From positions 1-64,000 of the IMG/VR virus record IMGVR_UViG_3300026521_000471: 64,000 nt of DNA; one strand, written 5' to 3'. Shown here in pieces: positions 1,155 to 53,031 of the stretch; position 1 is the first letter of the stretch, and every line of letters begins with the position of its first letter. Below the pieces are notes generated by a model that ran no database searches, was not told the DNA's origin, and saw only the letters and a program-made list of their open reading frames with translations. The position numbers and the translations under genes were made by a program.

Positions 1155-1161
1155 GTAAAAT

Positions 1162-15041: not shown

Positions 15042-16229
15042 TTATTTCTTTCTCAGTTTATTTTTTAATTCTTCTATTTGCTTAATTTTTTTCTCAGTAA
15101 TATCTTGTTTGATTGAAATATAACCAATCTTTACCCCATCTTTATCATAATATGGTGAAATCACATTATTTGACCAATAAGCACCACCATTTTTCTTTTT
15201 AGATTTAATTTCTCCTACCCAGTTTTTATCCGCTTCAATAGTTTCCCATAATTTCTTAAAAACATTTGCATTCATATCCGGATGTCTTATAATATTATGT
15301 GGTTCGCCTAATAATTCTGTTTTTGAATAGCCTGTTGTTTTACAAAAAGCTGATGATACATCTACAATTACTCCAAATAAATTCGTCTTGGTAAATATGA
15401 CATGTTTTTCAAAATCAGAATGCATACTAGTTAGTTGTGTATTAAGAATATCATTTTGTGTCATTAAGTCCGAAAAATCTTTGCTGTATTCATCGGCGAT
15501 TTTTTCATTTTCAAAATCAGCCCTTTCTTTTATTTTAATCATTGAATATATATAAATTATTCCAGAAATAAGCATGATCATAGAGACAATGAATAAAACA
15601 AATAACTGTAAATGTTTAATATTATCATTAATATCATTTATTGGTATCGTAGCTTCAGTAACCCCTCTAGCATCCCCTATTTTCCATTTAAAATCCCAAG
15701 TCTTTAACGGGTGGTGATTATGGCATTGGACACAAGATTTATTAGTCATATATTCGGTTTTCGCATACGTTAGATAATCTGTCCCGTCCTTTTCCGTTCT
15801 TAAAAATAGTTCCTTATGACCCTTTATATTTTTTAAGACCTTCAGCTGTAATTTTGTCAGAACTCTATCAGATTGATTTTTAAATGGAAAATTACTATAA
15901 ACAGATATACGTAAATTTGGATCGTCTATCATTGAAGCTACATCATGCATAAATGTTGCAGGATACGGTATTGTATTATTATCTTTATGTTCTGTACTAA
16001 ATTTTATACCATTAATATTATATATATCATCAACTACGTATTTGGCATAGTATTCTTTCGTTTTTAAAAGTAGATTTACTACTGATTTAGTTTTATCTTC
16101 TGCTAAATCAACTGCATATTCATGCATTTTATATGGAATAAAGACGTAAAGTGATATTAATGTAACAATATAAGATATAGTCACTCCAATTAAAAATTTA
16201 TTAGAAAACATTTGTAAAATATTTTTCAT
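15042..16229 (-). CDS. membrane sensor: periplasmic c-type heme domain (DUF3365/Tll0287-like) plus cytoplasmic PAS, no output domain
   Basis: TM helix, IPYPATF, YSNFPFKN, CVQCH (CxxCH), WKIGDARG, TM helix, PAS (HNIIRHPDM...LWETI...WVGEIKS); start at ATG 16229 after GAGGGA. Confidence 0.85.
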   Translation of the reverse strand: MKNILQMFSNKFLIGVTISYIVTLISLYVFIPYKMHEYAVDLAEDKTKSVVNLLLKTKEYYAKYVVDDIYNINGIKFSTEHKDNNTIPYPATFMHDVASMIDDPNLRISVYSNFPFKNQSDRVLTKLQLKVLKNIKGHKELFLRTEKDGTDYLTYAKTEYMTNKSCVQCHNHHPLKTWDFKWKIGDARGVTEATIPINDINDNIKHLQLFVLFIVSMIMLISGIIYIYSMIKIKERADFENEKIADEYSKDFSDLMTQNDILNTQLTSMHSDFEKHVIFTKTNLFGVIVDVSSAFCKTTGYSKTELLGEPHNIIRHPDMNANVFKKLWETIEADKNWVGEIKSKKKNGGAYWSNNVISPYYDKDGVKIGYISIKQDITEKKIKQIEELKNKLRKK

Positions 16230-16293
16230 AAGTCCCTCAGTTTGTTGATTTATCAACTTATTTATTTTCGGATTTACTTTCTTTAATTTATGA

Positions 16294-16315
16294 TTAAGGT
16301 CTAATATAATATAAT
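16294..16315 (+). promoter_or_regulatory. class I promoter TTAAG-N11-TATAAT
   Basis: Motif match upstream of 16338. Confidence 0.65.
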
Positions 16316-16337
16316 ATAAAAAATTAAAAAAGGATAT

Positions 16338-16736
16338 ATGATGCATATACGTAGTTTAGATTATTTTGATAAAGTGGGTCTGGTAACAAGCGGACTCTCT
16401 ATTTTTATTTCAAGTATTTTTTTACTTATGAGTTTTAGTTATTTAACAGAGAATTATTTAGTTATTTTAGGGTTGGTAAGTATTTCTTTAGTCCTAAATA
16501 ATTACTACCTTACCATAACTACACCAGAAATATTTAAAAAGATTAATGATGATCCCTGGAAATTTATTTTAGAACAAAGACCTATACTCGGACCTATTGC
16601 CGTTTTATTAAGTTTTTTATTAATAGGGACATTAATTAGTGGTAATCTTTTTGCATGGCAAATATATATTATATATTTTATTATGCTTATGCTTATGAAT
16701 CATACCTATTCAAAAAAATATAAACTTAGAGATTAG
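16338..16736 (+). CDS. membrane protein (about 4 TM)
   Basis: Hydrophobic segments. Confidence 0.7.
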   Translation: MMHIRSLDYFDKVGLVTSGLSIFISSIFLLMSFSYLTENYLVILGLVSISLVLNNYYLTITTPEIFKKINDDPWKFILEQRPILGPIAVLLSFLLIGTLISGNLFAWQIYIIYFIMLMLMNHTYSKKYKLRD

Positions 16737-17727: not shown

Positions 17728-18390
17728 ATGAAAAAATATCCAAGAACATTTCATTTTCAGTTTTCTCCAGAAGTACATGATGATGATAAAGTTATATCTA
17801 TGAGATATCTTGGAAATTTTCTACAAGACGAAATAGTTATCCTAGAAAAATTAGATGGTGCTAATAGTTGTCTGAAAGGTCATCAAGGTGTATTTGGAAG
17901 AAGTCATACTTTACCAACTAAAGAACCTTGGTACGACCACCTAAAAGGTTTATACTATTCTAAATTGGATAACCTGAATCCGGACTATTGGTATTTTGGA
18001 GAAAATACCTATGCTATTCATAGCATTAAATATACTAATATGGATAGTTATTTTTATCTATTCGCTATCTATGATACAGTTAATAAAATATGGCTGTCTT
18101 GGGATGATTTAGTAGAAGAAGCAAAAAGAGTTGATATACCTACTGTACCTGTATTATTTAGAGGTACAGTTATCTCAATGGCTGAAGTAAATAAATGGAT
18201 GGATAAACACATTACCGATGAATCTCAATTAGGTGGTGAATTAGAAGGTTTTGTTATGAGAGTAACAAAAGCAATCCCAGGAGATAAATTCAATGAGTTT
18301 GTAGCAAAATACGTTAGAAAAGGTCATGTGCAGACTGATGACCATTGGACAAAAAATTGGAAACCTCAAACTTTAAAGGTAAATAAATGA
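17728..18390 (+). CDS. ATP-dependent RNA ligase family protein
   Basis: KYPRTFH, motif I EKLDGAN, FGEN, FYLFAI, motif IV EGFVMR, motif V AKYVR. Confidence 0.85.
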   Translation: MKKYPRTFHFQFSPEVHDDDKVISMRYLGNFLQDEIVILEKLDGANSCLKGHQGVFGRSHTLPTKEPWYDHLKGLYYSKLDNLNPDYWYFGENTYAIHSIKYTNMDSYFYLFAIYDTVNKIWLSWDDLVEEAKRVDIPTVPVLFRGTVISMAEVNKWMDKHITDESQLGGELEGFVMRVTKAIPGDKFNEFVAKYVRKGHVQTDDHWTKNWKPQTLKVNK

Positions 18391-26841: not shown

Positions 26842-28137
26842 GTGGAAAATATTGATATAGGTATTATTGATGTAGAATCTTTAAAAACCTTAAATAAAAT
26901 TTTAGAATCAAAAAAAGAATATATTATAAATTATTGGCTAGATGATGAAAAACTCAAGCCAATTTTTGAGATGTTGGAAATAGAAAAAGAAACATTTAAA
27001 AGCAAATACGCATATCATATTTTTCATCATTTTCAATCCATTGATTATGATAATATGTATTTTAAAACATATATCGATGAAATGGAAGACAAACAGCATT
27101 TAATAAAATATTTTTACCGATTAATCGCTCATCTAAAGAATAAGATTATATTATTTTTAATACAGTATAACATAGATAACAATGATAAAATATTTATGGA
27201 TGATTCACTGCTATATACGATTGATAATGCTATATCTGAATTATTAGATTCTATAACAAAACATCTTCAAAGAGATTATACTGCAAATACAAAAAAATTA
27301 AAGATATTAGAAAATGCTGCATTAGTTACTAGAACTGATAAAGACGGTAGCATATTATTTATGAGCCCACCATTATTAGAGTTACTAGGATATTCAGAAG
27401 AGGAAATGCTTGGAGCAGGTTTTAATAAAATCAGACATCCCAGAGTTTCTTCTAAATTTTATGAAAAACTATGGAGGACATTAAAATCTGGTAAACCTTT
27501 CAAAGGGACTATTAAAAATTTAACTAAGAATAGAAAAGAAGTAATATTTCATACACAAATTGTTCCTGATTTTAATTTTGATGGAGAAATAGTTGGTTAT
27601 ACAGCTATAAAAACAGATTTAACCGATAAAACAAGAGCAAGAACTGACACATTAACAGGTCTTTTAAATCGTTCAGCATTTAATGATCGATTATCTGAAC
27701 TTATAGATAGATATAACAATTTTCATATTCCAGTTTCTTTAATAATGATTGATATTGATTATTTTAGTGAAGTAAATAATAACTACGGTCATATTACTGG
27801 TGATAAAACTCTAAAACATTTTGTTAAACTAATTAAAGAGATAATTAGACCTACTGATACATTTGCAAGATGGGGAGGGGAAGAATTTATTATAATTCAA
27901 AATAATACATTAGATAATTCTATTAAAACTGCTGAAAGAATAAGAAAACATATAGCAGAAAGCACGTTCCCAGAAGTAGGACAAAAAACATGTAGTCTAG
28001 GTGTGGCAGAATTTAATAATAGTTATGCAGATATAGATTCATTTATAAATGAACTTGATAAAGCATTATATTATTCAAAAGAACATGGACGTAATAAGGT
28101 CTCATACGTAGTTAAAAATGGTATAGAATCTGTTTAA
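26842..28137 (+). CDS. PAS-GGDEF diguanylate cyclase
   Basis: PAS (FNKIRHP...LWRTL), DTLTGLLNR, DIDYFSEVNNNYGHITGD, I-site RPTD, active site RWGGEEF. Confidence 0.93.
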   Translation: MENIDIGIIDVESLKTLNKILESKKEYIINYWLDDEKLKPIFEMLEIEKETFKSKYAYHIFHHFQSIDYDNMYFKTYIDEMEDKQHLIKYFYRLIAHLKNKIILFLIQYNIDNNDKIFMDDSLLYTIDNAISELLDSITKHLQRDYTANTKKLKILENAALVTRTDKDGSILFMSPPLLELLGYSEEEMLGAGFNKIRHPRVSSKFYEKLWRTLKSGKPFKGTIKNLTKNRKEVIFHTQIVPDFNFDGEIVGYTAIKTDLTDKTRARTDTLTGLLNRSAFNDRLSELIDRYNNFHIPVSLIMIDIDYFSEVNNNYGHITGDKTLKHFVKLIKEIIRPTDTFARWGGEEFIIIQNNTLDNSIKTAERIRKHIAESTFPEVGQKTCSLGVAEFNNSYADIDSFINELDKALYYSKEHGRNKVSYVVKNGIESV

Positions 28138-30892: not shown

Positions 30893-30897
30893 AATAT

Positions 30898-30921
30898 AAA
30901 TACCCTTAAAAGAGGGTATTT
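30898..30921 (+). terminator. hairpin, possible terminator
   Basis: AAATACCCT-taaaag-AGGGTATTT directly after the 29288 ORF. Confidence 0.45.
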
Positions 30922-31207
30922 ATGGATTTTTTTATTTTCATTTTATATAGTCTAGCAGCTTATAATGTTTTTCTTATAGCTCCGCTTTTTTTTTAAAATC
31001 CTTTCTATTCTTGGATTTGTCTATATAAATTATTTGATATGGTGAGATAGATGTATGAAGTTATAGCAATATCAAAAGATAATCATAAGTACAGAGTAAT
31101 ACTAAATTGTAATATTAAAGATATTCCATCAGTATTCAAAGATTTTATTATTGATAAAGGGTGGGATCATTATGAATATAAAATACATTCTATTAATGAG
31201 ATAACCG

Positions 31208-31555
31208 ATGACTAGAATTGATAATAATTCATTCAAAGAAGCATTGGATAATATTTTAAATAAAAGTAGGATAGCTGTAATATTATCTGGTAGATTAAAC
31301 TGTATAAACTGCCAATTAACAAAAGCTAATATCCTAAATTATTTAAAAAAAAATCCAAAGACAAATATAGATTTTTTATATTTAAATGGTAGCATAGATG
31401 ATATTTTAGAGTCCTCTTATTATCAAATGGAAGAGCTTAATGAATACCCTAAAACTGCTATATTTTCAAGTTCAAATAATCCAACTTTTAAAGAAGGTAT
31501 TATTACAGAAGAAGATTTGTCTAAGATTGAACAATTAAAGAAAAACTGTTTATAA
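31208..31555 (+). CDS. thioredoxin-fold protein
   Basis: CINC near the N-terminus, EYPKT cis-Pro region. Confidence 0.6.
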   Translation: MTRIDNNSFKEALDNILNKSRIAVILSGRLNCINCQLTKANILNYLKKNPKTNIDFLYLNGSIDDILESSYYQMEELNEYPKTAIFSSSNNPTFKEGIITEEDLSKIEQLKKNCL

Positions 31556-31562
31556 CCGATAT
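31536..31562 (+). promoter_or_regulatory. sigma28 (FliA)-type promoter
   Basis: TAAA-N15-ACCGATAT versus consensus TAAA-N15-GCCGATAA, 28 nt before ATG 31591. Confidence 0.65.
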
Positions 31563-31590
31563 AGGAATTATAACGATTAAAGGAAAGAAA

Positions 31591-31818
31591 ATGAATGGGA
31601 TTAACTCGTATAATCAAATTTCTCATACGTATAAAGTAAATGATGTAGCTACGCATAAAAAAGAGAATAACATTGCAGATAATACAAAAGAACCTATGTC
31701 AAAAGAAGATATTATAAGTTCTAAGGATTTATCACCGGAACAAAAACTAGATATGTTAGGAATAAAGAAGATGTCGTCTGACGAATTAGCGAAAAAATTA
31801 GCTGATGAATTAATATAG
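31591..31818 (+). CDS. FlgM-like anti-sigma28 factor (putative)
   Basis: 75 aa, disordered N-half, C-terminal amphipathic DELAKKLADELI resembling short Campylobacterota FlgM ends; sigma28 promoter upstream. Confidence 0.55.
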   Translation: MNGINSYNQISHTYKVNDVATHKKENNIADNTKEPMSKEDIISSKDLSPEQKLDMLGIKKMSSDELAKKLADELI

Positions 31819-31820
31819 AT

Positions 31821-31842
31821 TTAAGAATAATTTTCATATAAT
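31821..31842 (+). promoter_or_regulatory. class I promoter TTAAG-N11-TATAAT
   Basis: Motif match; ATG 31849 lies 6 nt downstream, implying a leaderless mRNA. Confidence 0.65.
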
Positions 31843-31848
31843 TACAGT

Positions 31849-32268
31849 ATGAAAAAATTATTTAAAACTTCATTTTTTAGTATAAAAGTTAGTGATTCAA
31901 GACAGTCTATGTTTGGAAAAGGTGTTCAAGTTGCTGATATAACAATTCGTAGTAGCAATGAAATAGAGCTTAATCCATTAGAGAATCAATGGCATATACC
32001 AGTCAAAGTACCCTTCTGGTACGTAATACTTGAAACGATAAGTCAGTTAGAAGATGAATTTCATATCAATTTAGAGAAGCCAGTTTATGGTAATCTCACT
32101 ATGATTGAAAACAAAGAAACTGGATTATATAGTATTTCTGATCTAATATCAGAATATAATAATATACAGGAAAATCATCCTGATCTAATTTTAAAATACT
32201 ATCATGTAAATATTAATAACTTAAATATCTTTGATTCTAATGGTGCTTATACCAATATCAACATTTAA
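31849..32268 (+). CDS. hypothetical protein (internal HPDLIL)
   Basis: ORF track. Confidence 0.6.
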   Translation: MKKLFKTSFFSIKVSDSRQSMFGKGVQVADITIRSSNEIELNPLENQWHIPVKVPFWYVILETISQLEDEFHINLEKPVYGNLTMIENKETGLYSISDLISEYNNIQENHPDLILKYYHVNINNLNIFDSNGAYTNINI

Positions 32269-32305
32269 TTTGTATAATTAAATTATAAACCAACAAGGAA
32301 TAAAA

Positions 32306-33604
32306 ATGGCAAAAAAAACATACACAGTTATTGAACGTAATGGACATAAATATAATCTTTTAGCACTACCAGATACAAATTTTTTTAAGTTTGAAATAAT
32401 TAATTTGTGGGGTTCTAATATCGAACGTTTGTATGAAACAAAGTTTGGTAAAAATGTTTATGGTATCTCTCACTTTATAGAACACTTAGGTTTTAGAAAC
32501 CCCAAAGATTTCAGTACAGCAGAACTTTTAAACCATTTGAAAAACGACGGTACTTATAATGCTTCAACAGATTATGACCGCATCAATTATTGGTTTCAAA
32601 CTACAATGGATAGAGTTGATTTAGCTATAAAATTAGTTGCAAACTATGCTTTAAATACATTAGATAATATCCCATCAGATGAATTTGAAATCGAAAAGAA
32701 AGTAGTGTATAATGAAGCGAAACGTTATGCTGATGATGACCAAACGATGTTTTGGTTTAATAGTACTAGAGCACTAACAGGTTATAAAGAAGAAGATAAT
32801 ATTATAGGTATTCCTGAAACAATTGACACTTTTGAAATTGATGATTGTATAAGAATTAAAGATTTATTTTTAAGTAATGCACAAAATATTTTTAATGTTA
32901 CTTACGATCCAAGTATTCTAACTGCCAATGAAGTAATCGATAAGATAGAGCTTGAACTACATAGACATAAACCATTAGGTATTATGGATAAAATTTCTGA
33001 AGAAGAATATAAAGGAGTTGTAATTCAACCTAAACATATCAAAACTACGTTGAGTAATGAGAGTGAACAACATATAACTTATCTAAATTTTGATATTGTT
33101 GAAAATATAGAGGTTGCAAGAGCCGGAAATCAATATTTAGCAAGATATGCCGAAGGAACTTCTTTAGATGATGTAATTAGAGAGCAGAACGGTCTAACTT
33201 ATGGAATTACGTTAGGTGCAGCAAACATTTCGTATAAACCATATACTTATTTTGGGTGTGATGTTTCAAAAGGCGATGAGGAACTACTACTTAAATTATT
33301 TAAAGAAAGTATTAATGCTTCAGTTGATGCTTGGAATGAGAAAACACATAAAAAATTTATGGACGCTAAAAAATTGAAAAGAGTTATGAATTTATTAGAC
33401 CAAAAAAATTATGGTGGTTGGCATAATAATGGGACATGGTATCCAGAGATTATTGAAGAAATGAAAGAAGTATTAGCAACAGATTTAGATAATGCATATG
33501 AAGTCGCAGATGAAAAATATGCTACTGTTGAAAGAGTAAGAGATTATTTAGAAAAATTTAGAAAAGCAGTCAATGAAGATGATTTTGCATTAGTAACAAA
33601 TTGA
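32306..33604 (+). CDS. M16 (insulinase) family zinc peptidase
   Basis: GISHFIEHL (HxxEH), NASTDYD, EKKVVYNE, IREQNGLTY. Confidence 0.9.
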   Translation: MAKKTYTVIERNGHKYNLLALPDTNFFKFEIINLWGSNIERLYETKFGKNVYGISHFIEHLGFRNPKDFSTAELLNHLKNDGTYNASTDYDRINYWFQTTMDRVDLAIKLVANYALNTLDNIPSDEFEIEKKVVYNEAKRYADDDQTMFWFNSTRALTGYKEEDNIIGIPETIDTFEIDDCIRIKDLFLSNAQNIFNVTYDPSILTANEVIDKIELELHRHKPLGIMDKISEEEYKGVVIQPKHIKTTLSNESEQHITYLNFDIVENIEVARAGNQYLARYAEGTSLDDVIREQNGLTYGITLGAANISYKPYTYFGCDVSKGDEELLLKLFKESINASVDAWNEKTHKKFMDAKKLKRVMNLLDQKNYGGWHNNGTWYPEIIEEMKEVLATDLDNAYEVADEKYATVERVRDYLEKFRKAVNEDDFALVTN

Positions 33605-33619
33605 AGATAAAGGATTAAA

Positions 33620-33820
33620 ATGGAACCAAATTCTTGGAACGATTATTTAATGAGAAATACTCATTTAGTAGATGAATTATCGACGTATGTTTCAAATACA
33701 ATGGATAAAACTGAGTTAGAAGCTGAAAACATAAAGTTAAAATATACACTACGTGAAATTCTTTCTAAGGTGGGTACAACCCACCCAGATTTATTAATAA
33801 AATATAGTGAATTTGTTTAA
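33620..33820 (+). CDS. hypothetical protein (near-terminal HPDLLI)
   Basis: AAGGA RBS. Confidence 0.6.
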   Translation: MEPNSWNDYLMRNTHLVDELSTYVSNTMDKTELEAENIKLKYTLREILSKVGTTHPDLLIKYSEFV

Positions 33821-34037
33821 ATATGTGTAAATATGATATAAAATCTATAAATCCTAGATATAATATTACTAAAAAGACCGATGATAGAGACATTAATGAA
33901 ATCTATAACGATTAATATGGTATAAGAGATGATGACAACGACTTTATAAATATAATTGATATTTTCGCAACCACATTAACATGGTTTATATATTTGAGTT
34001 TACTTTTATCAATTTCCTTCTATTTTTTAAGTAAGAC

Positions 34038-34059
34038 TTAAGCACTTTTATTATATAAT
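34038..34059 (+). promoter_or_regulatory. class I promoter TTAAG-N11-TATAAT
   Basis: Motif match. Confidence 0.7.
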
Positions 34060-34084
34060 TTATAATTAAATTAAGGAGAATAGT

Positions 34085-34453
34085 ATGGATTACAATACTG
34101 TTACAGAAAAAGTGTTAGAAGGTTTATCAATAGGTGAAGAATTATTTTATTTTGAAGTTCCTACTTGCAAAATAGATTATATAGAAATCCCTCAAATTAT
34201 CAAAATCATTAAAAAAGATGACGACTCATTTTTTTGTCCCACATATGATTTAAATCGTAGTAAAGATACATTACTTAATCTTTTTTCAAAAGAAAATAAA
34301 TCGATTATGATTGCTAGAAGTGAATTGGAAGCTAAACAATTATTCTTATCGTATTATGAAAACTACTTAGAATCTCTTAGAGGAGAATTAGAATTTCTTG
34401 AAGAAGCAATACCAAATCTTAAAAAAACAGATTTTTTAAAAGATCTCCAGTAA
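34085..34453 (+). CDS. hypothetical protein
   Basis: AAGGAG RBS. Confidence 0.65.
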   Translation: MDYNTVTEKVLEGLSIGEELFYFEVPTCKIDYIEIPQIIKIIKKDDDSFFCPTYDLNRSKDTLLNLFSKENKSIMIARSELEAKQLFLSYYENYLESLRGELEFLEEAIPNLKKTDFLKDLQ

Positions 34454-34466
34454 TTTAGGATACCCT

Positions 34467-35093
34467 ATGAAGATCAAAAGTAACTTAAAATCTAAAGGTC
34501 GTAGATCCAATATCTTATTCGATAAAATGAGAGAATATATTTCATTACAACCAATACTAATCCGAAGTTTAGTAATTGGTGTGATTTTAATGATTTCATA
34601 CTTTATATGGTCATATTCTGGATTATTAGCAATAGGTTTTTTTGTATTGGCTAGTATTTTAACAGGACAGGCGGACCCAGGTGATAAACTGGGTATGGGT
34701 TTTCTCTCTATTTTAGCTATTTTTTCATTCGGTTTATTTGATGTTTATAAAGTATCCGAGGATAAAATTCCCATAGAGTTTAATAAAGTTGTTTATACAG
34801 ATAGTACAGAGAAAATTGTGCTATATGCCAATAAGCCCATTAACGAAGCTTTAGTAGTACATCCAGAATCAAAACTGTATTATGATTTTAAATTATATGA
34901 CCAAAATTTATCAGCATACATTAAAGAAGAATCTAGAAGATCACATTGGGCTAATCTTTTAAATCTCGAACCAACCACATATCAATACGATTTAATAATA
35001 AATGCTGGAAAGAAACAAATTAAAATTACTTCTTGGAAAAGTTCAAAAACAAAAATGTTATTTGGGAGAATAAATCATGAAAAAAATAATTAA
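34467..35093 (+). CDS. membrane protein
   Basis: N-terminal TM segments. Confidence 0.65.
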   Translation: MKIKSNLKSKGRRSNILFDKMREYISLQPILIRSLVIGVILMISYFIWSYSGLLAIGFFVLASILTGQADPGDKLGMGFLSILAIFSFGLFDVYKVSEDKIPIEFNKVVYTDSTEKIVLYANKPINEALVVHPESKLYYDFKLYDQNLSAYIKEESRRSHWANLLNLEPTTYQYDLIINAGKKQIKITSWKSSKTKMLFGRINHEKNN

Positions 35094-39469: not shown

Positions 39470-39654
39470 TTGTAGATGTAGATAAAAAGGCAATCCAACA
39501 ACAAATAAAGTTTTTAGTTAAAATAATAAACCAATATCAAAAAAGATTAGAAACTGAACCTCAATTTTTAACTAGAGAAGTTGAAGAAAATTTAGAAAGA
39601 GCTAAAGCAAAATATGATTATATTATTAAAGAATATCCAGACTTAATCATCTAG
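39466..39654 (+). CDS. small protein with PE-tail (YPDLII)
   Basis: Terminal motif; ATGA overlap. Confidence 0.7.
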   Translation: MIVDVDKKAIQQQIKFLVKIINQYQKRLETEPQFLTREVEENLERAKAKYDYIIKEYPDLII

Positions 39655-41301
39655 ACTATTTTTTAAATCTAATATATTACCGAATGATTTTTTATGAGTT
39701 ATTTGAGCAAAAATATTTTTCATATCATTACCTGAAAGATGACCTCGTTCTGCTTCTCTCATTAAATTTTTTGTTATTTTAAACTCGCCATTATATTTAA
39801 ATAATTCAAATGCTAAATTTATAATATGACCTTGTATTTGTAACGTATTAGAAGCACTAGCATATCCAAATTCTCTGGCTACTGCAATAATTTTTTTCAT
39901 GTTTTGTGGCATATTCCAAATACTAAAAAGCTTCTCAACAGCGTGTAAATTATTAAATCCTAATAGATTCATTTCTAAACTAGTTATAGATTTTGACGAT
40001 TTTTGTAAATTTTTAAAACGATCTACTCTCTCATTAATAATTAAAGCCTGATTTGTCAGGAGCATACCTAGTGGTAATATATGCATAACAGCAGTTAAAT
40101 CATCTTTATCATCTTGGGGTATATCTATAAATTTAATCCATTCTGAAACAAATTTAACTCGGTATTTTGAAACTTCAATTAACTCTTCTAATGAAATATC
40201 ATATGCGTCTAAATATAAACTGTCAAATGTTTCGTTAGCTACCTCTGTTATTGCTAATGCCCCTATTTGTTTTTTACCTAGTAATGATACAGCAATAGAG
40301 ATTTTTGATACTCGATTTGGTAGGCCTATATACGGGGAATTAATTTCCCGTAAAATAATTGCTGAGAACATTGGATCTTGTTCAACAACTTTTACTATTT
40401 GGTTGATATTTGAATTGCTATCAAAACACAATTCTTTTAACTTAGTTAATGTACTAGGTAAAGGTTCAATTGCTTCAGCTAGTTCAACTAATGTAATCTG
40501 CCCTTTATTAATAGGTATTTCAATCTCCGTATTACTACGTTCATATTTTTTAACAATCATAGTCTTAAAATCAGCCATTTTCATATTATGTGTATTATAA
40601 ACATTTTCGATTGCTAATTTTTCTTTAACTAAGTTTAAAGAACTTTCTTTACTGAATTTACTCAAAACATATAAATTTTCAAAATCGAATTCAATATCAT
40701 TTAAACAAACTATGAGATCTATGATATGCCCATCGGGGTATTTTAAATCAGTTATTAAAATTTTTTTACCGGGCATTTTTATAAGGTCAATTGCCTCGGA
40801 TTTAGTAGAAACACTATCCACAAATTTAAATTTTGTACTAAGAATTTCTGTTAATAATTTTGATACTTTTGGATCTCGATTAAGGATCACAATATCATAA
40901 TATTCATTAAGTTTTGGGGAAGTGTAATTTTTACATTGAACGATTGGCGCAGTATCAAATTCAATAGCATAAAATTCTGGATCTTCATGTTGTTGAATTT
41001 GAGTTACCCACCTTTCAATTTGAATAGAAAAGTTTTCAAACCAATTAATCACATCTTGATTAAAAGCACAAGTATAATTTTTTATAAAAAACAAAATATC
41101 TTCTGTTTTTTCAAGGAGAATAGAAATTTCTTCAAATTTATGATAGTAAGTAATAGCTTTTAATGAATGTATCGACCTAAATAATGTGTCGATCAATTTT
41201 GATGAATTAATTTCATCATTTCTAAAATCAATAATAGTGTTATTAATAATTATAGACAAATTATCTAATCTTATAATATAATCTTCAAGTTCTTCAGTCA
41301 T
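39643..41301 (-). CDS. Hpt + receiver-like + HDOD signalling protein
   Basis: CheA-P1-like LFRSIHSLKA; REC-like ILITDLKYPDG; HDOD PLPSTL...VEQDPMFSAIILREINSP...AVSLLG...WNMP. Confidence 0.85.
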   Translation of the reverse strand: MTEELEDYIIRLDNLSIIINNTIIDFRNDEINSSKLIDTLFRSIHSLKAITYYHKFEEISILLEKTEDILFFIKNYTCAFNQDVINWFENFSIQIERWVTQIQQHEDPEFYAIEFDTAPIVQCKNYTSPKLNEYYDIVILNRDPKVSKLLTEILSTKFKFVDSVSTKSEAIDLIKMPGKKILITDLKYPDGHIIDLIVCLNDIEFDFENLYVLSKFSKESSLNLVKEKLAIENVYNTHNMKMADFKTMIVKKYERSNTEIEIPINKGQITLVELAEAIEPLPSTLTKLKELCFDSNSNINQIVKVVEQDPMFSAIILREINSPYIGLPNRVSKISIAVSLLGKKQIGALAITEVANETFDSLYLDAYDISLEELIEVSKYRVKFVSEWIKFIDIPQDDKDDLTAVMHILPLGMLLTNQALIINERVDRFKNLQKSSKSITSLEMNLLGFNNLHAVEKLFSIWNMPQNMKKIIAVAREFGYASASNTLQIQGHIINLAFELFKYNGEFKITKNLMREAERGHLSGNDMKNIFAQITHKKSFGNILDLKNSLDD

Positions 41302-42109: not shown

Positions 42110-43682
42110 ATGGCAAAAGAGAAATTTGTTAGGGGTGAAAAACCTCATGTTAATGTGGGAACAGTAGGGCATAGACTATGTGCCATCTCTTGGTAACAAG
42201 GGATTAAAAAGAGTTTAAATTGTCTGGAAACCCCTAAAGCTTCTTTTACTAAAACAGAGCCAGAAATGGCATATGGTATAGTTAATGAAAATTAGAAAGA
42301 AAAAAGAAGATGGAATATGTGGAAACGCTAAGTTCTTTATAATGGGCAATCAGCAGCCAAGTTACCTAACTCAAATATATTGAGATTTCTATGTGAATAG
42401 AATTTAAGGTAGAAGGTTCAGAGACTGTAATAACTCAGTCCGTTAATCTTAATTGAATTTCGGATTATGGTACAGTCCAGACTACAACAACTTTACTTAG
42501 TTAGTTGGCTTATGAAAGTAAGTGTAGTAATTGGTAGATCATGGCAAGACTACTTTAACTGCAGCAATTACAGCAGTAATGGCAGTTAAAAACGGTGCAG
42601 CATTTATGGATTACGATCAAATCGATAATGCACCAGAAGAAAGAGAAAGAGGTATCACTATTGCTACTTCTCATGTTGAATATGAAACTGATAAAAGACA
42701 TTATGCTCATGTTGATTGTCCAGGTCACGCAGATTATGTTAAAAATATGATTACTGGTGCTGCACAAATGGATGGTGCTATTCTTGTTATTGCTGCTACT
42801 GATGGACCTATGGCTCAAACGAGAGAACATATCCTTCTTTCAAAACAAGTTGGTGTACCAGCAATTGTTGTTTTTATGAACAAAGAGGACCAACTTGATG
42901 ATGAAGATAAAGATGAAATGGCTGAACTTGTAGAAATGGAGATTAGAGAACTTCTTGACCAATACGGTTTTGATGGTGATAACACTCCTGTTATTCTTGG
43001 TAGTGCATTTCAAGCTCTTGAAGAAGCAAAAACCGGTACTTTAGGTGAGTGGTCAGAAAAGATTGTACAACTTATGGATTCAGTAGATGAGTGGATTCCA
43101 GAACCAGTTAGAGATACTGATAAGGATTTCTTAATGCCTATTGAAGATGTATTCTCAATTGCAGGTAGAGGTACAGTTGTTACTGGTAAAATTGAGAGAG
43201 GTACAATCAAACTTGGTGAAACAGTAGAAATTGTAGGTATTAAAGACACTCAAACATCAACTGTTACAGGAATTGAGATGTTCCGTAAAGAGATGGAAGA
43301 AGGTTTAGCTGGGGATAATGCAGGTATTCTTCTAAGAGGAATTTCAAAAGATGATGTTGAAAGAGGTCAAGTTCTTTGTAAACCTGGTTCAATAACACCA
43401 CATACAAAGTTCAAAGCGGAAGTTTATGTTCTAAGTAAAGATGAGGGTGGTCGTCATACTCCATTCTTTAATAATTATAGACCTCAGTTCTATTTCTATA
43501 CATCTGATATTACTGGTGCAATTACACTAGAAGAAGGTGTTGAAATGGCTATGCCTGGTGATAATGTGACTATTACGGTAGAACTTATTGCTCCAATGGC
43601 TATCGAAAAAGGAACAACTTTTGCTATTAGAGAAGGTGGTAGAACTGTCGGCTCTGGTATGATTGGAGAAATTATCGAGTAA
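42110..43682 (+). CDS. tuf: elongation factor Tu, two exons: join(42110..42172,42534..43682), 403 aa
   Basis: Exon 1 [21 protein letters not shown] plus exon 2 VDHGKTT; [30 protein letters not shown]. Confidence 0.97.
42173..42533 (+). ncRNA. group I intron (361 nt, no ORF) in the tuf P-loop
   Basis: P1 GGCAU/GUGCC with U.G at the splice site; P10 CUAU/GUAG; GGGCAATCAGCAGCCAAG; GTTCAGAGACTG and ACAGTCC (P7); terminal G; removal restores GHVDHGKT. Confidence 0.95.
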
Positions 43683-43738: not shown

Positions 43739-44713
43739 ATGATAGATTATACAAGATGGAACACATTTCTACCAGTAGATTTGGGCTATGGAGATGTTAA
43801 AATCGCCCTTAAAAAAGAAGATGGTACTTTAATGATTGCTAAGTATCCGTCAGCAGTAGCTAAAGTCAATCCAAAGAGATTTGGTGCCGGCGAAGCAGTT
43901 GAATTTGAAGGCGATTATTACTTAATTGGCGAGAATGCTATAAACTACAAACCCGTAGAAATGAATGATTATGAAACATTAGAAAAGTACGCACCATTAC
44001 TTATTTTTCATGCATTTAGAAAATATGGAGAATTCAATACTATTGTAACAGGACTTTCAATTAGACAAGAGGATAATTCTCAATCATTTAAAGATAGGCT
44101 TTCTAGTTTTGAAATTGATGGTCAAGAATATAATATGGATGTAAAATTACTACCCCAAGGTATTGGAGCTAAAATTGTAGTACAAAAACAATTTAATGAA
44201 ATCCAAAACTATTTAGTTTGTGATGGTGGCTTTAATACTGTTGATTTAGTTCCTGTATTTGATGGAAAAGCAGATTTACACTCTGTTGATGCTTTAGAAA
44301 ATAGAGGCATTATTGAGGTTGTAAATGAATTAATTGAATATATTGCAGGTGAGTATAATATAGAACTATCACCAAAAGAAGCTAAGTATGCCTTAGATAA
44401 TCAACGCATTGATATTTATGGAAAAGAAATTGATTTAACAGATATTATTGCACATATTACAACAGATTATTCTAAAGACTTAGTAAGACAAATAGAAAGA
44501 AAGTTTAAAAAATCATGGCATAAATTCCAAAAAGTTATTATTGTTGGTGGGTTATCTCATTTTGTAGATGCTTCTGTTTATGAACATTTAGCAACTGTAC
44601 CTAAAGGTGAATACTTTAATGCTGTTGGGTTCCACCAATACGCTGATGAAAAATTAGGGGATACGACACCTCAAAAACCAAAGGTTACTAGAAGACGAGT
44701 GAGTAAACTCTAA
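43739..44713 (+). CDS. ParM/StbA-family actin-like ATPase
   Basis: VDLGYGDVK (phosphate 1), TGLS, LPQGIG, CDGGFNTVD (phosphate 2), IVGG, NAVGF. Confidence 0.88.
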   Translation: MIDYTRWNTFLPVDLGYGDVKIALKKEDGTLMIAKYPSAVAKVNPKRFGAGEAVEFEGDYYLIGENAINYKPVEMNDYETLEKYAPLLIFHAFRKYGEFNTIVTGLSIRQEDNSQSFKDRLSSFEIDGQEYNMDVKLLPQGIGAKIVVQKQFNEIQNYLVCDGGFNTVDLVPVFDGKADLHSVDALENRGIIEVVNELIEYIAGEYNIELSPKEAKYALDNQRIDIYGKEIDLTDIIAHITTDYSKDLVRQIERKFKKSWHKFQKVIIVGGLSHFVDASVYEHLATVPKGEYFNAVGFHQYADEKLGDTTPQKPKVTRRRVSKL

Positions 44714-45712: not shown

Positions 45713-47100
45713 ACACCTCGCTGAGAAAACCCAATGGCTAAAGACCATTGGGATGAATCAGCAATTATTTGACATTTTACATTAATTTATTGTAAAATAA
45801 GTATATAGATATAGAGTTTAAGGAGGATTGAGTTGAAATTTCATCGTAATTACAAATTCAGATTACAACCAAATACTGAACAATCCGATTTCCTTAATCA
45901 TTATTTCTTTACTGCAAATCAAGCCTGGAACTTTGCTTTGAATTTAAAAATCAAAGACCTTTCTGTCAATTCTTCTCTGCCGAAGGCAGATAGGAAATAC
46001 TTAAAGTTCAAAGATATTTATTCTCTTACAAAAGAACACCTTAAAGAACGAGGAATTAAATACAATTCAGGTGTAATTCAAGATGAACTAAGAAAATTAG
46101 ATGATACGTTTTCTCGATTCCATAAGAAAATTGGTGGATTTCCTAAATTCAAGTCCTCAAAGAAAATCGAACAATCAATCATCATCAGGAATCAAGCAAC
46201 TTATTGGGATGAAATGGAATTGGAGATCTTCAGAAAGAAAATCAGAACTAAATTCCATCGAGAAATTCCTTTGGAATCTAAATTTACTGGTGGTATTGTA
46301 AAAAGAGAGTCAGATGGAAACTATTATTTTATTGCTAATTTGATCATTAATGATAAAAATCAATATCCAAAAACAGGAACAGAATGTGCTCTTGATTTGA
46401 ATGTAGAAAATATAGCTATTTCAGATTCAAATGGAAATCGAAGATTGATTAAATTGGAGGATTTTTCAAAAAGTAAATATTCAAAGAACTTTTTAAAGTT
46501 ACAAAGAAAACTTTCAAAAAGATACAAAGAAAAGAACTTTTCTAAAAATACCAAACGATTACAAAAGAAATCAAATCGAATGTACAAGAAAATCAAAAAC
46601 AAAAAAGAGGATTTTTTTCACAAGCTCAGTAATGAGCTGACTAATCAATATGATAGAATCACAATAGAAGATCTGGAAATCAAAAAGATGAAAGAATCGA
46701 AATCAAATCGACTCAATCGTCTGATTTCAGATGTAAGTTGGGGTTCGTTGATACAAAAAATCAAATATAAACAAGAACAAAAGAACAAATTGATTAGAGA
46801 ATTAAATCCAGCTTTTAGCAGTCAGAGATGCTTCAAATGTGGTCATATCAGTAAGAACAATAGAAAAACGCAAAGCGTTTTTAATTGTGAAAACTGTGGA
46901 TACACTACTCATGCAGACCTGAATGCTTCAGATAATCTCTTAGATTATGATAATTGGTCTCTGGAACAGATGACCTTGATCCAGCAATGGAATCAGAATC
47001 TTTGTATCGAGAATGTCAGTTAATTCTGAAATTCGATGATTGGAGTGCCTCTCGGCACTCCCTTAGAAGCCCAATCGTCTTTAGCGGTTGGGTAGTTCAC
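45713..47100 (+). mobile_element. IS200/IS605-family non-autonomous (tnpB-only, IS1341-like) element, 1388 bp
   Basis: TTTAT target at 45708-45712; left hairpin CCCAATGG/CCATTGGG 45730-45752; right hairpin 47070-47092 then TTCAC; no target duplication; no tnpA. Confidence 0.9.
45833..47023 (+). CDS. tnpB: TnpB RNA-guided endonuclease
   Basis: YKFRLQP HTH, GFPKFKS, RuvC D (ALDLN), E (IEDL), Zn finger CFKC/CENC, D (ADLNAS). Confidence 0.95.
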   Translation: MKFHRNYKFRLQPNTEQSDFLNHYFFTANQAWNFALNLKIKDLSVNSSLPKADRKYLKFKDIYSLTKEHLKERGIKYNSGVIQDELRKLDDTFSRFHKKIGGFPKFKSSKKIEQSIIIRNQATYWDEMELEIFRKKIRTKFHREIPLESKFTGGIVKRESDGNYYFIANLIINDKNQYPKTGTECALDLNVENIAISDSNGNRRLIKLEDFSKSKYSKNFLKLQRKLSKRYKEKNFSKNTKRLQKKSNRMYKKIKNKKEDFFHKLSNELTNQYDRITIEDLEIKKMKESKSNRLNRLISDVSWGSLIQKIKYKQEQKNKLIRELNPAFSSQRCFKCGHISKNNRKTQSVFNCENCGYTTHADLNASDNLLDYDNWSLEQMTLIQQWNQNLCIENVS

Positions 47101-51651: not shown

Positions 51652-52262
51652 AATTAGATGATATTACTATGAGTGAATTTGACTGGTGTATCCACGCTAT
51701 TTTAGTTGCTGGAAAATCAGCAAAATTTGGAACTTCAAAAATTACTATATTAAAAAAATTTGCAAGTAATATGGATTTAACCATGGAAGATTATTTATTT
51801 AAGTTGTGGAATGAAGATAAATTGATTGATAAATTGAAAGAAATTAAAACTGGTAAATATCAGTTACTTGGTAAAACTTTCGATTACTTGTTTAAGAATA
51901 AATTAAATATTTTTTCAAATTTAGATACTACTGAATTAGAAAAAATCCCTGGTATTGGAATGAAGTCATCAAGATTTTTAAAGTCATTAGTTGAATCAAA
52001 TCATAATGATTTCGCAATATTGGATGTTCATATTTTGAAATGGATGAAAACATTAGACTTAAACTTAGAAATTAAAATACCTAGTTCAACACCTAATAAA
52101 AAGGAATATTTAATATTAGAAAAAGTCTTTATAGCTGAGGCAAATAAAAGAGGCAAAACTTCATTTGAATTAGATAGAGAAATATGGTATAATTATACTA
52201 AAGATTCAGGTTTGCAAAAGTTGGAAAAAAATAAAGTTGAGGGTATAAACTATGAAAATTAA
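51648..52262 (+). CDS. HhH-GPD DNA glycosylase (Ogg-like)
   Basis: LEKIPGIGMKSSRF, AILDVHILK, YLILEK, ELDREIW. Confidence 0.85.
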   Translation: MKLDDITMSEFDWCIHAILVAGKSAKFGTSKITILKKFASNMDLTMEDYLFKLWNEDKLIDKLKEIKTGKYQLLGKTFDYLFKNKLNIFSNLDTTELEKIPGIGMKSSRFLKSLVESNHNDFAILDVHILKWMKTLDLNLEIKIPSSTPNKKEYLILEKVFIAEANKRGKTSFELDREIWYNYTKDSGLQKLEKNKVEGINYEN

Positions 52263-53031
52263 AGCTGTTTTTAATAGAGATGATAAAAGACAACAAACAT
52301 ATATAAAATATTTAGAAAGAACTTTTCCAGAAATAATCAATGAGCCTAACCCAGATTTATTTTTGGTTGTTGGTGGTGACGGTGCTATGCTACATGCTCA
52401 TAAAGAGTATGGTCATTTAGGAAAACCATTTCTAGGAAAAGGTTTTGGGACTCTTAATTTCATTATGAATCATTTTGAAAATGATTTTGAAATTATTGAT
52501 GGATTACTAGAAGGAACTATGGTTCCAACCATAATAAAGACTGAAAAAATTAAGGTTATAGTCAAGAAAACCAACGGTAAAAAAATTATAAAAGAGGCAA
52601 TAAATGATATTGTGATTGGTAATGATATAATGGATTATCATCATTTTCAAATTGATTCGGAAAGAGGATCTTTTGAAAGATTTAACTTTTCTGGATTAGG
52701 TATTTGTATTTCAACTCCATTAGGTTCAACAGCATTTAACCTTAATAATGGTGGTAAAGTTTTGCCACCAGATGCTGAAATGTGGAGCATTACATCCGTA
52801 GTATCTGACCATAATGTGAATGAAGTTATGATGGCTCAAACAGTTGATATAAAAATAAAAAGTTCTAGACATTCACCAACATTGTACGTTGATGGAACAG
52901 CAACAGCAATACCATTAGAATACGGTGATAAAATTAAGTTAAAAAAATTTAAGCATAAGTTTAAACTCGCTTTTATCGAACCAAAGGTATTCTTTAAAAA
53001 AAGAATGAAACTTATTCAAAAAAAGAGATAA
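52252..53031 (+). CDS. nadK: NAD kinase
   Basis: VGGDGAML, GTLNF, AINDIV, ISTPLGSTAFNLNNGG, VDG. Confidence 0.9.
   Translation: MKIKAVFNRDDKRQQTYIKYLERTFPEIINEPNPDLFLVVGGDGAMLHAHKEYGHLGKPFLGKGFGTLNFIMNHFENDFEIIDGLLEGTMVPTIIKTEKIKVIVKKTNGKKIIKEAINDIVIGNDIMDYHHFQIDSERGSFERFNFSGLGICISTPLGSTAFNLNNGGKVLPPDAEMWSITSVVSDHNVNEVMMAQTVDIKIKSSRHSPTLYVDGTATAIPLEYGDKIKLKKFKHKFKLAFIEPKVFFKKRMKLIQKKR

What the first reader, a model, noticed from the sequence alone, without database searches (positions are those of the whole stretch)
31536..31818. FlgM-like gene driven by a sigma28-type promoter: a phage brake on host flagella
Seen: TAAA-N15-ACCGATAT sits 28 nt before a 75-aa ORF with a low-complexity N-half and C-terminal ...DELAKKLADELI. 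It is the only such promoter I noticed in the window. Established: FlgM inhibits FliA through its C-terminal helices, is short in Campylobacterota, and flgM is often FliA-transcribed. Inference: expressed only when host FliA is active, it would shut off flagellin synthesis, saving resources or removing a receptor for superinfecting phages. The usual 'I..G.Y' segment is replaced by KLDMLGIKKM, so homology is uncertain.
Basis: partly seen in the sequence, partly recalled or inferred. Interest (0 to 1): 0.8.

Follow-up and report, generated by a model that had tools for sequence, protein, structure and literature searches.

The report
Huge-phage gene with sigma-28 promoter
A small, conserved gene of a family of very large phages from hydrothermal-vent bacteria carries its own, strongly conserved promoter of the type used for late flagellar genes. 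This suggests the phage links the gene to the host's motility programme, but no search supports the idea that the protein is a copy of the flagellar brake FlgM.

Summary
TAAAG-N14-ACCGATATA lies 28 nt before a real 75-aa gene (31591-31818). It is the only such site in the window. In all 11 related lineages recovered from metagenomes, the same two blocks sit at the same spacing before the orthologous gene. They fall in three reading-frame contexts of the upstream gene, which points to selection on the DNA itself. The rest of the region uses Campylobacter-type sigma-70 promoters (TTTAAG-N11-TATAAT).

The element is a 224-kb IMG/VR viral contig, with relatives of 221 and 496 kb. Its EF-Tu is closest to EF-Tu of Campylobacterota.

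The protein has a conserved MNxINPY tip, a disordered linker of about 30 aa and a confident three-helix C-terminal domain. It is under purifying selection.

FlgM membership is not supported. Pfam, NCBIfam, PDB profile and two profile-profile comparisons all gave nothing, and the protein-language-model search (ESM Atlas) did not list FlgM. The nearest lead from that search is the Cj0814 family of flagellum-dependent secreted proteins.

The closest named EF-Tu sequences are from Arcobacteraceae, which are reported to lack FliA and FlgM, so which sigma factor reads the promoter is not settled.

Verdict: a real, new, sigma-28-wired phage gene. A flagellar role is plausible and FlgM-like action is unproven.

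The parts
31536..31540 (+). -35 element TAAAG of the sigma-28-class promoter. It lies inside the last codons of the upstream gene.
   Evidence: Invariant in 11 lineages, in different reading-frame contexts.
31555..31563 (+). -10 element ACCGATATA. It matches the Campylobacter sigma-28 -10 sequence CGATwt, and its first base is the last base of the upstream stop codon.
   Evidence: GATATA is invariant and C(C/A) precedes it in 10 of 11 lineages. Consensus taken from PMC4626219 and PMC3656092.
31580..31584 (+). Shine-Dalgarno sequence AAGGA, 6 nt before the ATG.
   Evidence: AAGG is conserved in all lineages. An AAGGA motif is reported for C. jejuni in PMC3656092.
31591..31818 (+). Gene for the 75-aa protein, stop codon included.
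   Evidence: dN/dS is 0.21.
31591..31611 (+). Codons for the conserved N-terminal tip MNGINSY (family consensus MNxINPY).
   Evidence: Alignments.
31612..31698 (+). Variable, polar linker that tolerates indels and is predicted to be disordered (residues 8-36).
   Evidence: pLDDT is 51-57.
31699..31815 (+). Conserved C-terminal domain (residues 37-75; consensus LSREEIISSKDLSPEQKLxMLGIKPMSxxELAxxLAxxL), predicted as three short helices.
   Evidence: Helices at 38-42, 49-55 and 63-74, with pLDDT about 90.
31208..31555 (+). Upstream neighbour: a 115-aa thioredoxin-fold-like protein with a CxxC motif and a YPKT loop. It precedes the small gene in every locus that extends upstream, and its 3' end overlaps the promoter.
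   Evidence: The fold assignment rests on motifs only.
31820..31842 (+). Promoter of the next gene (31849..32268): TTTAAG-N11-TATAAT, the phage's general Campylobacter-type sigma-70 motif. It marks the downstream end of the small gene's unit.
   Evidence: The -35 consensus TTTAAGTnTT is given in PMC3824568.

Best explanation
The gene 31591-31818 is a conserved core gene of a clade of huge phages (221 to at least 496 kb) from hydrothermal-vent Campylobacterota. It has its own sigma-28 (FliA)-class promoter, whereas neighbouring genes use Campylobacter-type sigma-70 promoters. The gene should therefore be switched on when a sigma-28-class factor is active in the infected cell. The most likely such factor is host FliA, which is active in cells that have finished the hook-basal body and are building filaments.

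The product has a conserved seven-residue N-terminal tip, a disordered linker of about 30 residues and a compact three-helix C-terminal domain of about 40 residues. This is the general layout of small late-flagellar-regulon proteins.

My best guess is that it acts on the late flagellar pathway. The leading mechanism is FlgM-like negative feedback: the protein binds the sigma-28 factor that transcribes it and so lowers flagellin synthesis and motility.

Shown: the gene, the family, the synteny, the promoter conservation and the domain layout. Inferred: that FliA reads the promoter, that the target is flagellar, and the anti-sigma action. The protein is not a detectable FlgM homologue.
For: - Promoter: exact match and unique in the window. 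The two blocks are invariant, with fixed spacing, in 11 lineages and irrespective of the reading frame or coding status of the upstream gene. The motif is absent elsewhere in about 132 kb of these phages. It matches published sigma-28 -10 sequences, CGATwt/CGATTT (PMC4626219, PMC3656092).
- Different promoter class from the neighbours: TTTAAG-N11-TATAAT gives 20 hits against 5.4 expected, exceeded in 0 of 100 shuffles.
- Real, constrained protein family found only in this synteny.
- Layout: disordered N-terminal half and confident helices in the C-terminal part.
- The best named clusters in the ESM Atlas search are Campylobacterota Cj0814-family flagellum-dependent secreted proteins. This holds for two members that are 50% identical and for the C-terminal part alone.
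- The same elements carry PAS-GGDEF and HDOD signalling genes. These domains are commonly tied to the motile/sessile switch (general knowledge).
- Precedent: C. jejuni in the phage carrier state shows repressed sigma-28-dependent flaA expression and truncated flagella (PMC4534711).
Against: - No homology to FlgM by any test, and no structural match.
- The C-terminal domain is predicted to fold as a compact module on its own, which is less like the disordered FlgM.
- No flagellar genes lie nearby.
- The closest named cellular EF-Tu sequences are from Arcobacteraceae, which are reported to lack FliA and FlgM (PMC9321776).
- Three lineages have CAGATAT instead of CCGATAT. A change at the equivalent C abolishes a C. 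jejuni sigma-28 promoter (PMC3656092).
- A contig from an RNA library spans the promoter (31447-31653). Read-through from the upstream gene is therefore possible, or the library contains DNA.
Confidence: 0.35

Rival explanations
1. The protein is a flagellar type III export substrate or an export-gate competitor (like Cj0814, FspA or FlaG). It is expressed with late flagellar genes, and its conserved N-terminal tip and disordered linker act as the export signal. It would either be secreted through the flagellum or compete with flagellin for export, without touching sigma-28.
For: The top named ESM Atlas clusters are Cj0814-family flagellum-dependent secreted proteins (scores 0.93-0.94). Other small families, including a T3SS one (YopR/PscH), rank lower. 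The extreme N-terminus MNxINPY is conserved and followed by a disordered linker. The promoter is of the sigma-28 class, as for late secreted proteins of C. jejuni (PMC3656092). FlaG-type competition at FlhA is a known mechanism (PMC11536152).
Against: There is no HMM-level similarity to any such family. The number of shared language-model features (128-138) is below the level typical of true family members (170), so this is only a lead. No export chaperone lies next to the gene; the upstream neighbour looks thioredoxin-like.
Confidence: 0.2
2. The promoter is read by a sigma factor encoded by the phage in the roughly 160 kb that were not examined, or by another non-FliA factor. The small protein then has a phage-internal role unrelated to flagella, for example nucleic-acid binding or assembly.
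For: The hosts may be Arcobacteraceae, which lack FliA (PMC9321776). Three lineages tolerate C to A in the -10 core, which may point to a non-canonical reader. Huge phages are known to carry their own transcription factors (general knowledge). The C-terminal domain has a helix, 'LGI' turn, helix pattern that resembles HeH/SAP motifs; this is my own reading and was not tested.
Against: No FliA-like or sigma-70-family ORF was found in the 64-kb window or in related loci (phmmer; Pfam on 46 window ORFs). A phage sigma factor would be expected to serve many genes, yet the motif occurs once in about 132 kb. However, the virion gene region was not seen.
Confidence: 0.2
3. The protein is a true but highly diverged member of the FlgM family.
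For: It has a sigma-28 promoter.
Against: That alignment is not significant (P = 0.36, and 0.47 with a broader profile). Of the residues invariant across gamma- and beta-proteobacterial FlgM (D57, V63, A69, G73, D78, I82, A83 in E. coli numbering), the only invariant one retained in that alignment is A83. The Gly lies just outside it at conserved spacing, I82 becomes Leu and D78 becomes Ser. No Pfam, NCBIfam or PDB hit was found. FlgM was absent from the families listed in the ESM Atlas output. FlgM sequences from Campylobacterota could not be obtained for comparison.
Confidence: 0.12
4. The conserved bipartite DNA motif is not a promoter. It could be an operator for a phage regulator or a signal within a longer transcript, and the small gene is simply co-transcribed with the thioredoxin-like gene.
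For: A 207-nt contig from an RNA library runs across the motif, from 31447 to 31653. There is no terminator between the two genes.
Against: Two invariant blocks at exactly the canonical sigma-28 spacing, lying 21-33 nt before the ATG and followed by a Shine-Dalgarno sequence, are just what a promoter looks like. No RNA structure or Rfam family is present. The RNA library may contain DNA, and contigs do not show transcript ends.
Confidence: 0.08

Closest known systems
FlgM, the anti-sigma-28 factor (Pfam PF04316; TIGR03824)
   Same: It is a small protein. The N-terminal half is disordered and the C-terminal part is helical. The gene is preceded by a sigma-28-class promoter, which would give autoregulatory feedback. 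A short C-terminal stretch can be aligned (G-x3-M-x4-(I/L)A-x2-L).
   Different: No significant sequence, profile or structural similarity was found. Most FlgM-invariant residues are missing. The C-terminal domain is predicted to be a compact three-helix module. The gene is encoded by a phage and lies next to a thioredoxin-like gene, not next to flgN, flgK or other flagellar genes.
Cj0814 family of flagellar-dependent secreted proteins of Campylobacterota (PF28266)
   Same: It is the nearest named cluster by protein-language-model features, for two family members and for the C-terminal part. It comes from the same phylum as the presumed host. It is a small protein linked to the flagellum.
   Different: Its members are longer (99-128 aa). 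No HMM-level match was found. The shared-feature count is below that typical of true members. I could not obtain family sequences for an alignment, and I found no paper on the family.
Sigma-28 (FliA/SigD) class 3 promoters: TAAA-N15-GCCGATAA, with the Campylobacter -10 sequence CGATwt
   Same: The -35 TAAA(G), the 15-nt spacing and the -10 (A/G)CCGATAT all match. Several lineages even carry TAAAGTTT, which is the E. coli extended -35 as I recall it.
   Different: The promoter sits in a phage genome, partly inside the preceding gene. Three lineages have CAGATAT. The sigma factor that reads it has not been identified.
Phage-encoded anti-sigma factors and host-takeover proteins (for example T4 AsiA; general knowledge), and phage 'moron' genes that have their own promoters
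   Same: A small phage protein expressed from its own promoter inside a block of otherwise co-oriented genes, plausibly aimed at a host regulator.
   Different: The known examples target the housekeeping sigma factor and are made from early phage promoters. Here the gene is wired to an alternative, flagellar-class promoter and the target is unknown. I found no report of a phage gene under sigma-28 control or of a phage FlgM mimic.

Membership tests
FlgM (PF04316 / TIGR03824) | Match to the family HMM. | tested here: not met
   No FlgM hit at E <= 10 for the window protein or for any of 12 family members in Pfam or NCBIfam. HMMER's filters can drop very weak matches.
FlgM (PF04316 / TIGR03824) | Profile-profile similarity to FlgM alignments. 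| tested here: not met
   hhalign of A3 against enterobacterial FlgM gave P = 0.36 over 11 columns. Against gamma+beta-proteobacterial FlgM it gave P = 0.47 over 4 columns. A Campylobacterota FlgM profile could not be built.
FlgM (PF04316 / TIGR03824) | Conserved residues of the C-terminal sigma-28-binding helices (invariant D57, V63, A69, G73, D78, I82, A83 in alignment A7). | tested here: not met
   In the only alignable stretch, A83 is retained, the Gly lies at conserved spacing just outside it, I82 becomes Leu, D78 becomes Ser, and the rest have no counterpart without a gap.
FlgM (PF04316 / TIGR03824) | Disordered N-terminal half and helical C-terminal half. | tested here: met
   AlphaFold2: residues 1-36 have pLDDT 51-57 and the helices at 38-42, 49-55 and 63-74 have pLDDT about 90. 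This feature is not specific to FlgM.
FlgM (PF04316 / TIGR03824) | Binds and inhibits sigma-28. | not testable with these tools
   No complex prediction or assay is available here.
FlgM (PF04316 / TIGR03824) | Flagellar gene neighbourhood (flgN, flgK and others). | tested here: not met
   In all loci the neighbours are RlaP, PAS-GGDEF, a CxxCxxCC protein, a thioredoxin-like protein, an M16 peptidase, DUF2201 and HDOD.
Sigma-28 (FliA)-class promoter | TAAA and (G)CCGATA(A/T) separated by 15 nt. | tested here: met
   The site at 31536-31562 is exact, and 11 of 11 lineages keep both blocks and the spacing.
Sigma-28 (FliA)-class promoter | Conservation beyond what the overlapping coding sequence explains. 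| tested here: met
   TAAAG lies in codon position 2, in codon position 3, as the stop codon or after the stop in different lineages. Spacer and flanks vary, and synonymous divergence is 0.6 to above 1.
Sigma-28 (FliA)-class promoter | A sigma-28 factor is present in the infected cell. | tested here: inconclusive
   The host is inferred to be Campylobacterota. The top named EF-Tu hits are from Arcobacteraceae, reported to lack FliA (PMC9321776), while other Campylobacterota have it. No sigma factor gene was found in the window, and the rest of the genome was not seen.
Sigma-28 (FliA)-class promoter | Transcription starts downstream of the -10 element and depends on fliA. | not testable with these tools
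   Only assembled contigs of one RNA library were available, and one of them spans the site.
Cj0814 family of flagellar-dependent secreted proteins (PF28266) | Match to the family model. | tested here: inconclusive
   There was no NCBIfam or Pfam hit, but I could not verify that the model is in the copies searched.
Cj0814 family of flagellar-dependent secreted proteins (PF28266) | Resemblance by language-model features. | tested here: inconclusive
   It is the best named cluster for two members (scores 0.93 and 0.94 with 128 and 138 shared features) and ranks second for the C-terminal part (0.88). This is below the roughly 170 features typical of members.
Cj0814 family of flagellar-dependent secreted proteins (PF28266) | Flagellum-dependent secretion. 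| not testable with these tools
   This needs an experiment.

The most novel reading that the evidence does not exclude
A clade of huge phages of vent Campylobacterota carries a dedicated sensor-and-brake module for the host flagellar programme. A gene that is transcribed only when the late flagellar sigma factor is active encodes a new, non-FlgM fold, and this protein shuts down sigma-28 activity or flagellar export. Infected cells would then become non-motile, for example to block superinfection by flagellotropic phages or to keep the infected cell in the biofilm. If the hosts are FliA-less Arcobacteraceae, the alternative is that the phage brings its own sigma-28-class factor together with this promoter.
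Probability: 0.2. Interest if true: 0.8.

Novelty: new variant of a known kind. Interest (0 to 1): 0.6.

Why it matters
Phages are known to change host motility, but the molecular links are mostly unknown. In the Campylobacter phage carrier state, for example, sigma-28-dependent flagellin expression is repressed without a known phage factor (PMC4534711).

The phage gene described here has a promoter of the late-flagellar class that has been conserved through deep divergence. It is a concrete, cloneable candidate for such a link. It is also a rare case in which comparative data alone show that a phage gene is wired to an alternative sigma factor.

It offers a new 40-residue domain family to test for sigma-28 or export-gate binding. 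It also raises a clear question: who reads this promoter if the hosts are Arcobacteraceae, which are thought to lack FliA?

Tried and rejected
- A tblastn search with the 75-aa protein and a blastn search with an 8-kb stretch of the window found nothing in the phage collection.
- PHROGs gave nothing for the gene or its neighbours.
- A PDB profile search gave only a spurious U1-C match. Foldseek against the PDB found nothing with E < 1.
- Two HMMER hits to long proteins were rejected as repeat or compositional artefacts: a tail fibre P0010 and a eukaryote-type SRCR protein P0013.
- I built FlgM profiles from E. coli flgM, its homologues (which returned only close enterobacterial sequences) and plasmid-borne Ralstonia, Pandoraea and Burkholderia flgM. 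hhalign was negative with both.
- FlgM and Cj0814 sequences from Campylobacterota could not be obtained with the tools. Literature searches for Cj0814 gave nothing useful. CJM1_0791 in PMC5223770 is a different, 48.9-kDa protein.
- No family member was found in 185,579 species' genomes.
- A TnpB search aimed at naming the host found nothing.
- EF-Tu cluster look-ups returned no organism names.
- Walking the contig yields only about 4 kb per scan, so I abandoned it.
- Rfam and RNA folding of the 5' region showed nothing.
- RNA-library contigs cover the region only in fragments and give no transcript ends.

Full report
**1. The observation**

- TAAA is at 31536-31539. Fifteen bases follow, then ACCGATAT at 31555-31562.
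- A 28-nt leader contains AAGGA at 31580-31584.
- The ATG is at 31591. The ORF 31591..31818 gives 75 aa ending DELAKKLADELI.
- The -35 block lies in the last codons of the upstream gene (31208..31555). The -10 block begins at the last base of that gene's stop codon.

Taken alone the match is weak. The exact TAAA-N16-CCGATA occurs once in 64 kb, with 0.13 expected, and 12 of 100 shuffles had at least one match. Relaxed scans found nothing else that is well placed before a gene, so it is the only such site in the window.

**2. Relatives, and what they show about the promoter**

The first protein search found two relatives, at 99% and 76% identity. A full HMMER search of 1.84 billion representative proteins added nine small proteins of 71-92 aa. 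A metagenome scan added two more loci.

All of them come from metagenomes. No family member was found in genomes of 185,579 species.

Every locus has the same gene neighbourhood:
- an RlaP-like nucleotidyltransferase;
- a PAS-GGDEF protein;
- a CxxCxxCC protein;
- a protein of 109-125 aa with a CxxC motif;
- the small gene;
- an M16 peptidase;
- a DUF2201 metallopeptidase/VWA protein;
- an HDOD protein.

I compared the upstream DNA of 11 lineages, whose proteins are 42-80% identical to the window's protein.
- TAAAG and GATATA are invariant. C(C/A) precedes GATATA in ten lineages and AC in one.
- The spacing is fixed, and the site ends 21-33 nt before the ATG.
- A conserved AAGG ribosome-binding site follows.
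- The spacer and the flanks vary.
- TAAAG lies in codon position 2 of the upstream gene in two lineages and in codon position 3 in three. In at least four it is that gene's stop codon, and in one it lies after the stop.

The conservation is therefore at the DNA level and is not a by-product of coding. Synonymous divergence is already 0.6 between the two closest lineages and above 1 between others.

In about 132 kb of these phages, the motif in well-conserved form occurs only at this position.

The consensus, TAAAG-N14-(a/g)C(c/a)GATATA, fits the sigma-28 class. The published Campylobacter -10 sequence is CGATwt or CGATTT (PMC4626219, PMC3656092). Several lineages even carry TAAAGTTT-N11-GCCGATAT.

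I regard a sigma-28-class promoter as well supported (about 0.75).

**3. The surrounding transcription signals and the element**

The region otherwise uses a different, recurrent motif, TTTAAG-N11-TATAAT.
- There are eight exact copies on the + strand, seven of them 20-30 nt before a ribosome-binding site and ATG. The eighth, at 31820, lies directly before the ATG at 31849.
- With up to one mismatch there are 20 hits against 5.4 expected, a count reached by none of 100 shuffles.
- The motif equals the published C. jejuni sigma-70 -35 consensus TTTAAGTnTT combined with the -10 (PMC3824568).
- One copy (31820-31842) lies directly after the small gene and serves the next gene.

The small gene is therefore a single-gene unit with a different promoter class from its neighbours.

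The window is the first 64 kb of a 224,467-bp IMG/VR viral contig.
- Relatives include a 221-kb contig and a 496-kb contig that shares the EF-Tu/actin-like gene pair.
- The window encodes GrpE, DnaJ, EF-Tu, an RNA ligase, nucleotidyltransferases, an NAD kinase, an actin-like protein and TnpB. This is content typical of huge phages.
- I saw no virion genes in this part of the genome.

**4. The host**

The phage EF-Tu is 81-82% identical to cellular EF-Tu. The named sequences among the top hits are Malaciobacter mytili, an Arcobacteraceae bacterium and Campylobacterota MAGs.

The G+C content (27%), the sample types (hydrothermal vent, epibiont and biofilm), the sigma-70 motif and the AAGGA ribosome-binding site all fit Campylobacterota.

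Within the phylum the margin is small, and I could not resolve the host further.

This matters. Arcobacter species are reported to have lost FliA, FlgM, RpoN and FlgRS, while other flagellated Campylobacterota keep them (PMC9321776).

I found no sigma factor gene in the window or in related loci (Pfam on 46 window ORFs; phmmer with E. coli FliA on all ORFs). About 160 kb of the genome was out of reach.

**5. The protein**

The family shares three parts:
- an N-terminal tip, MNxINPY;
- a variable linker of 25-30 residues, rich in T, K, N and Q, which tolerates indels;
- a conserved C-terminal block, LSREEIISSKDLSPEQKLxMLGIKPMSxxELAxxLAxxL.

dN/dS between the window and L001 is 0.21.

AlphaFold2 with the 12-sequence alignment predicts residues 1-36 as disordered (pLDDT 51-57). 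It predicts three short helices at 38-42, 49-55 and 63-74, with pLDDT about 90. Foldseek found no significant PDB match.

**6. Is it FlgM?**

All tests were negative.
- Pfam and NCBIfam gave no FlgM hit for any of 12 members at E <= 10.
- A profile search of the PDB found no FlgM.
- Against a broader gamma+beta-proteobacterial FlgM alignment, P was 0.47.
- Most of the residues invariant in that FlgM alignment have no counterpart in this family.
- In the ESM Atlas, FlgM was not among the families listed in the named-cluster output.
- The best named cluster there, for two members that are 50% identical, is the Cj0814 family of flagellum-dependent secreted proteins of Campylobacterota. It ranks second for the C-terminal part.
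- The scores (0.88-0.94, with 82-138 shared features) make this a lead, not a finding.

I could not obtain Campylobacterota FlgM or Cj0814 sequences for a direct comparison. Very remote homology to short FlgMs therefore remains possible, at about 0.12.

**7. How it most likely works**

Shown:
- a conserved phage gene;
- a conserved sigma-28-class promoter that is unique in the region;
- a layout of disordered tip and linker followed by a small helical domain;
- co-residence with c-di-GMP-type signalling genes.

Inferred:
- The promoter is read by the host's FliA, so the gene reports, and is limited to, cells in the late flagellar, motile state.
- The product acts back on that pathway.

I rank the mechanisms as follows.
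- FlgM-like sequestration of sigma-28, as a functional analogue and not a homologue: about 0.25-0.3 within an overall 0.35 for 'FliA-gated effector of the late flagellar pathway'.
- A flagellar export substrate or export-gate competitor: 0.2.
- A phage-sigma-driven gene with an unrelated role: 0.2.
- True FlgM membership: 0.12.
- Not a promoter at all: 0.08.

The carrier-state phenotype of C. jejuni, in which sigma-28-dependent flaA is repressed and flagella are truncated (PMC4534711), shows that phage interference at this regulatory tier exists in the phylum without a known factor.

**8. RNA evidence**

One metatranscriptome library from a biofilm holds 100%-identical contigs scattered over 31.4-34.7 kb. 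One of them spans the promoter, from 31447 to 31653.

This shows the phage is present in that library. It gives no transcript ends, it may reflect read-through, and DNA carry-over cannot be excluded.

**9. Novelty and verdict**

I found no report of a phage gene under a sigma-28 promoter or of a phage FlgM mimic.

The feature is real and new in this setting. Its kind, a phage accessory gene with its own promoter and possibly an anti-sigma-like effector, is known, so I rate it a new variant of a known kind.

Interest is 0.6. It is higher if binding to FliA or to the export gate is shown, and lower if the motif turns out to be a general late promoter read by a phage sigma factor.

Noticed in passing
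window 7453, 19413, 22813, 24309, 31820, 35614, 44730, 59256 (+ strand), plus 12 one-mismatch sites: A recurrent promoter-like motif, TTTAAG-N11-TATAAT, lies 20-30 nt before a ribosome-binding site and ATG. With up to one mismatch there are 20 hits against 5.4 expected, reached by 0 of 100 shuffles. It matches the published C. jejuni sigma-70 -35 consensus TTTAAGTnTT (PMC3824568) and is probably the phage's general host-RpoD promoter.
   Followed up: partly
window 31820-31851: The TATAAT of the promoter before gene 31849..32268 ends only 6 nt before the ATG, with no Shine-Dalgarno sequence. This arrangement is conserved in the 76%-identity relative. The mRNA may be leaderless.
   Followed up: no
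window 1-64000; L015, L016, L024: The window is the first 64 kb of IMGVR_UViG_3300026521_000471 (224,467 bp). Relatives include a 221-kb JGI contig and a 496-kb NCBI contig (GCA_029935755.1) that shares the EF-Tu/actin-like gene pair. This looks like an undescribed clade of huge phages from hydrothermal vents.
   Followed up: partly
window 42531-43682: The phage-encoded EF-Tu is 81-82% identical to EF-Tu of Arcobacteraceae and other Campylobacterota. Other phage copies are 88-94% identical to it. Relatives are called at 402-403 aa, so the true start probably lies upstream of the listed TTG.
   Followed up: partly
window 15042-16346 (-), 26842-28137 (+), 39643-41301 (-): There are three signalling-type genes: PAS plus a Tll0287-like domain, a PAS-GGDEF diguanylate cyclase, and an HDOD protein. 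GGDEF and HDOD are conserved in the relatives. They may be phage tools acting on host c-di-GMP and motility.
   Followed up: no
window 437-1980, 17728-18390, 43739-44713, 52252-53031: The window also encodes GrpE and DnaJ chaperones, an RNA ligase, an actin-like (Alp7A-type) protein and an NAD kinase.
   Followed up: no
window 31208-31555: The upstream neighbour has an invariant G-x3-C-x2-C motif and a Y-P-(K/F)-T loop, as in thioredoxin-fold proteins. No Pfam hit was found. It precedes the small gene in every locus that extends upstream.
   Followed up: partly
window 30895-30924: A strong terminator-like hairpin (13 pairs) followed by a T run, readable on both strands, lies just after the 534-aa ORF. 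It probably ends the preceding transcription unit.
   Followed up: no
window 45833-47023; L001 17165-18682: The window carries a TnpB (IS605 OrfB/Cas12f-like) gene. Relative L001 carries a TnpB-like gene called on the opposite strand in its 20-kb locus, and none was called in the 20-kb locus of the 99% relative L003. No close copy was found in reference genomes.
   Followed up: partly
window 31447-34711: A biofilm metatranscriptome library (coded X7) holds seven contigs that are 100% identical to this region. The phage, or its RNA, is therefore present in an RNA data set that could be mined for transcript ends.
   Followed up: partly
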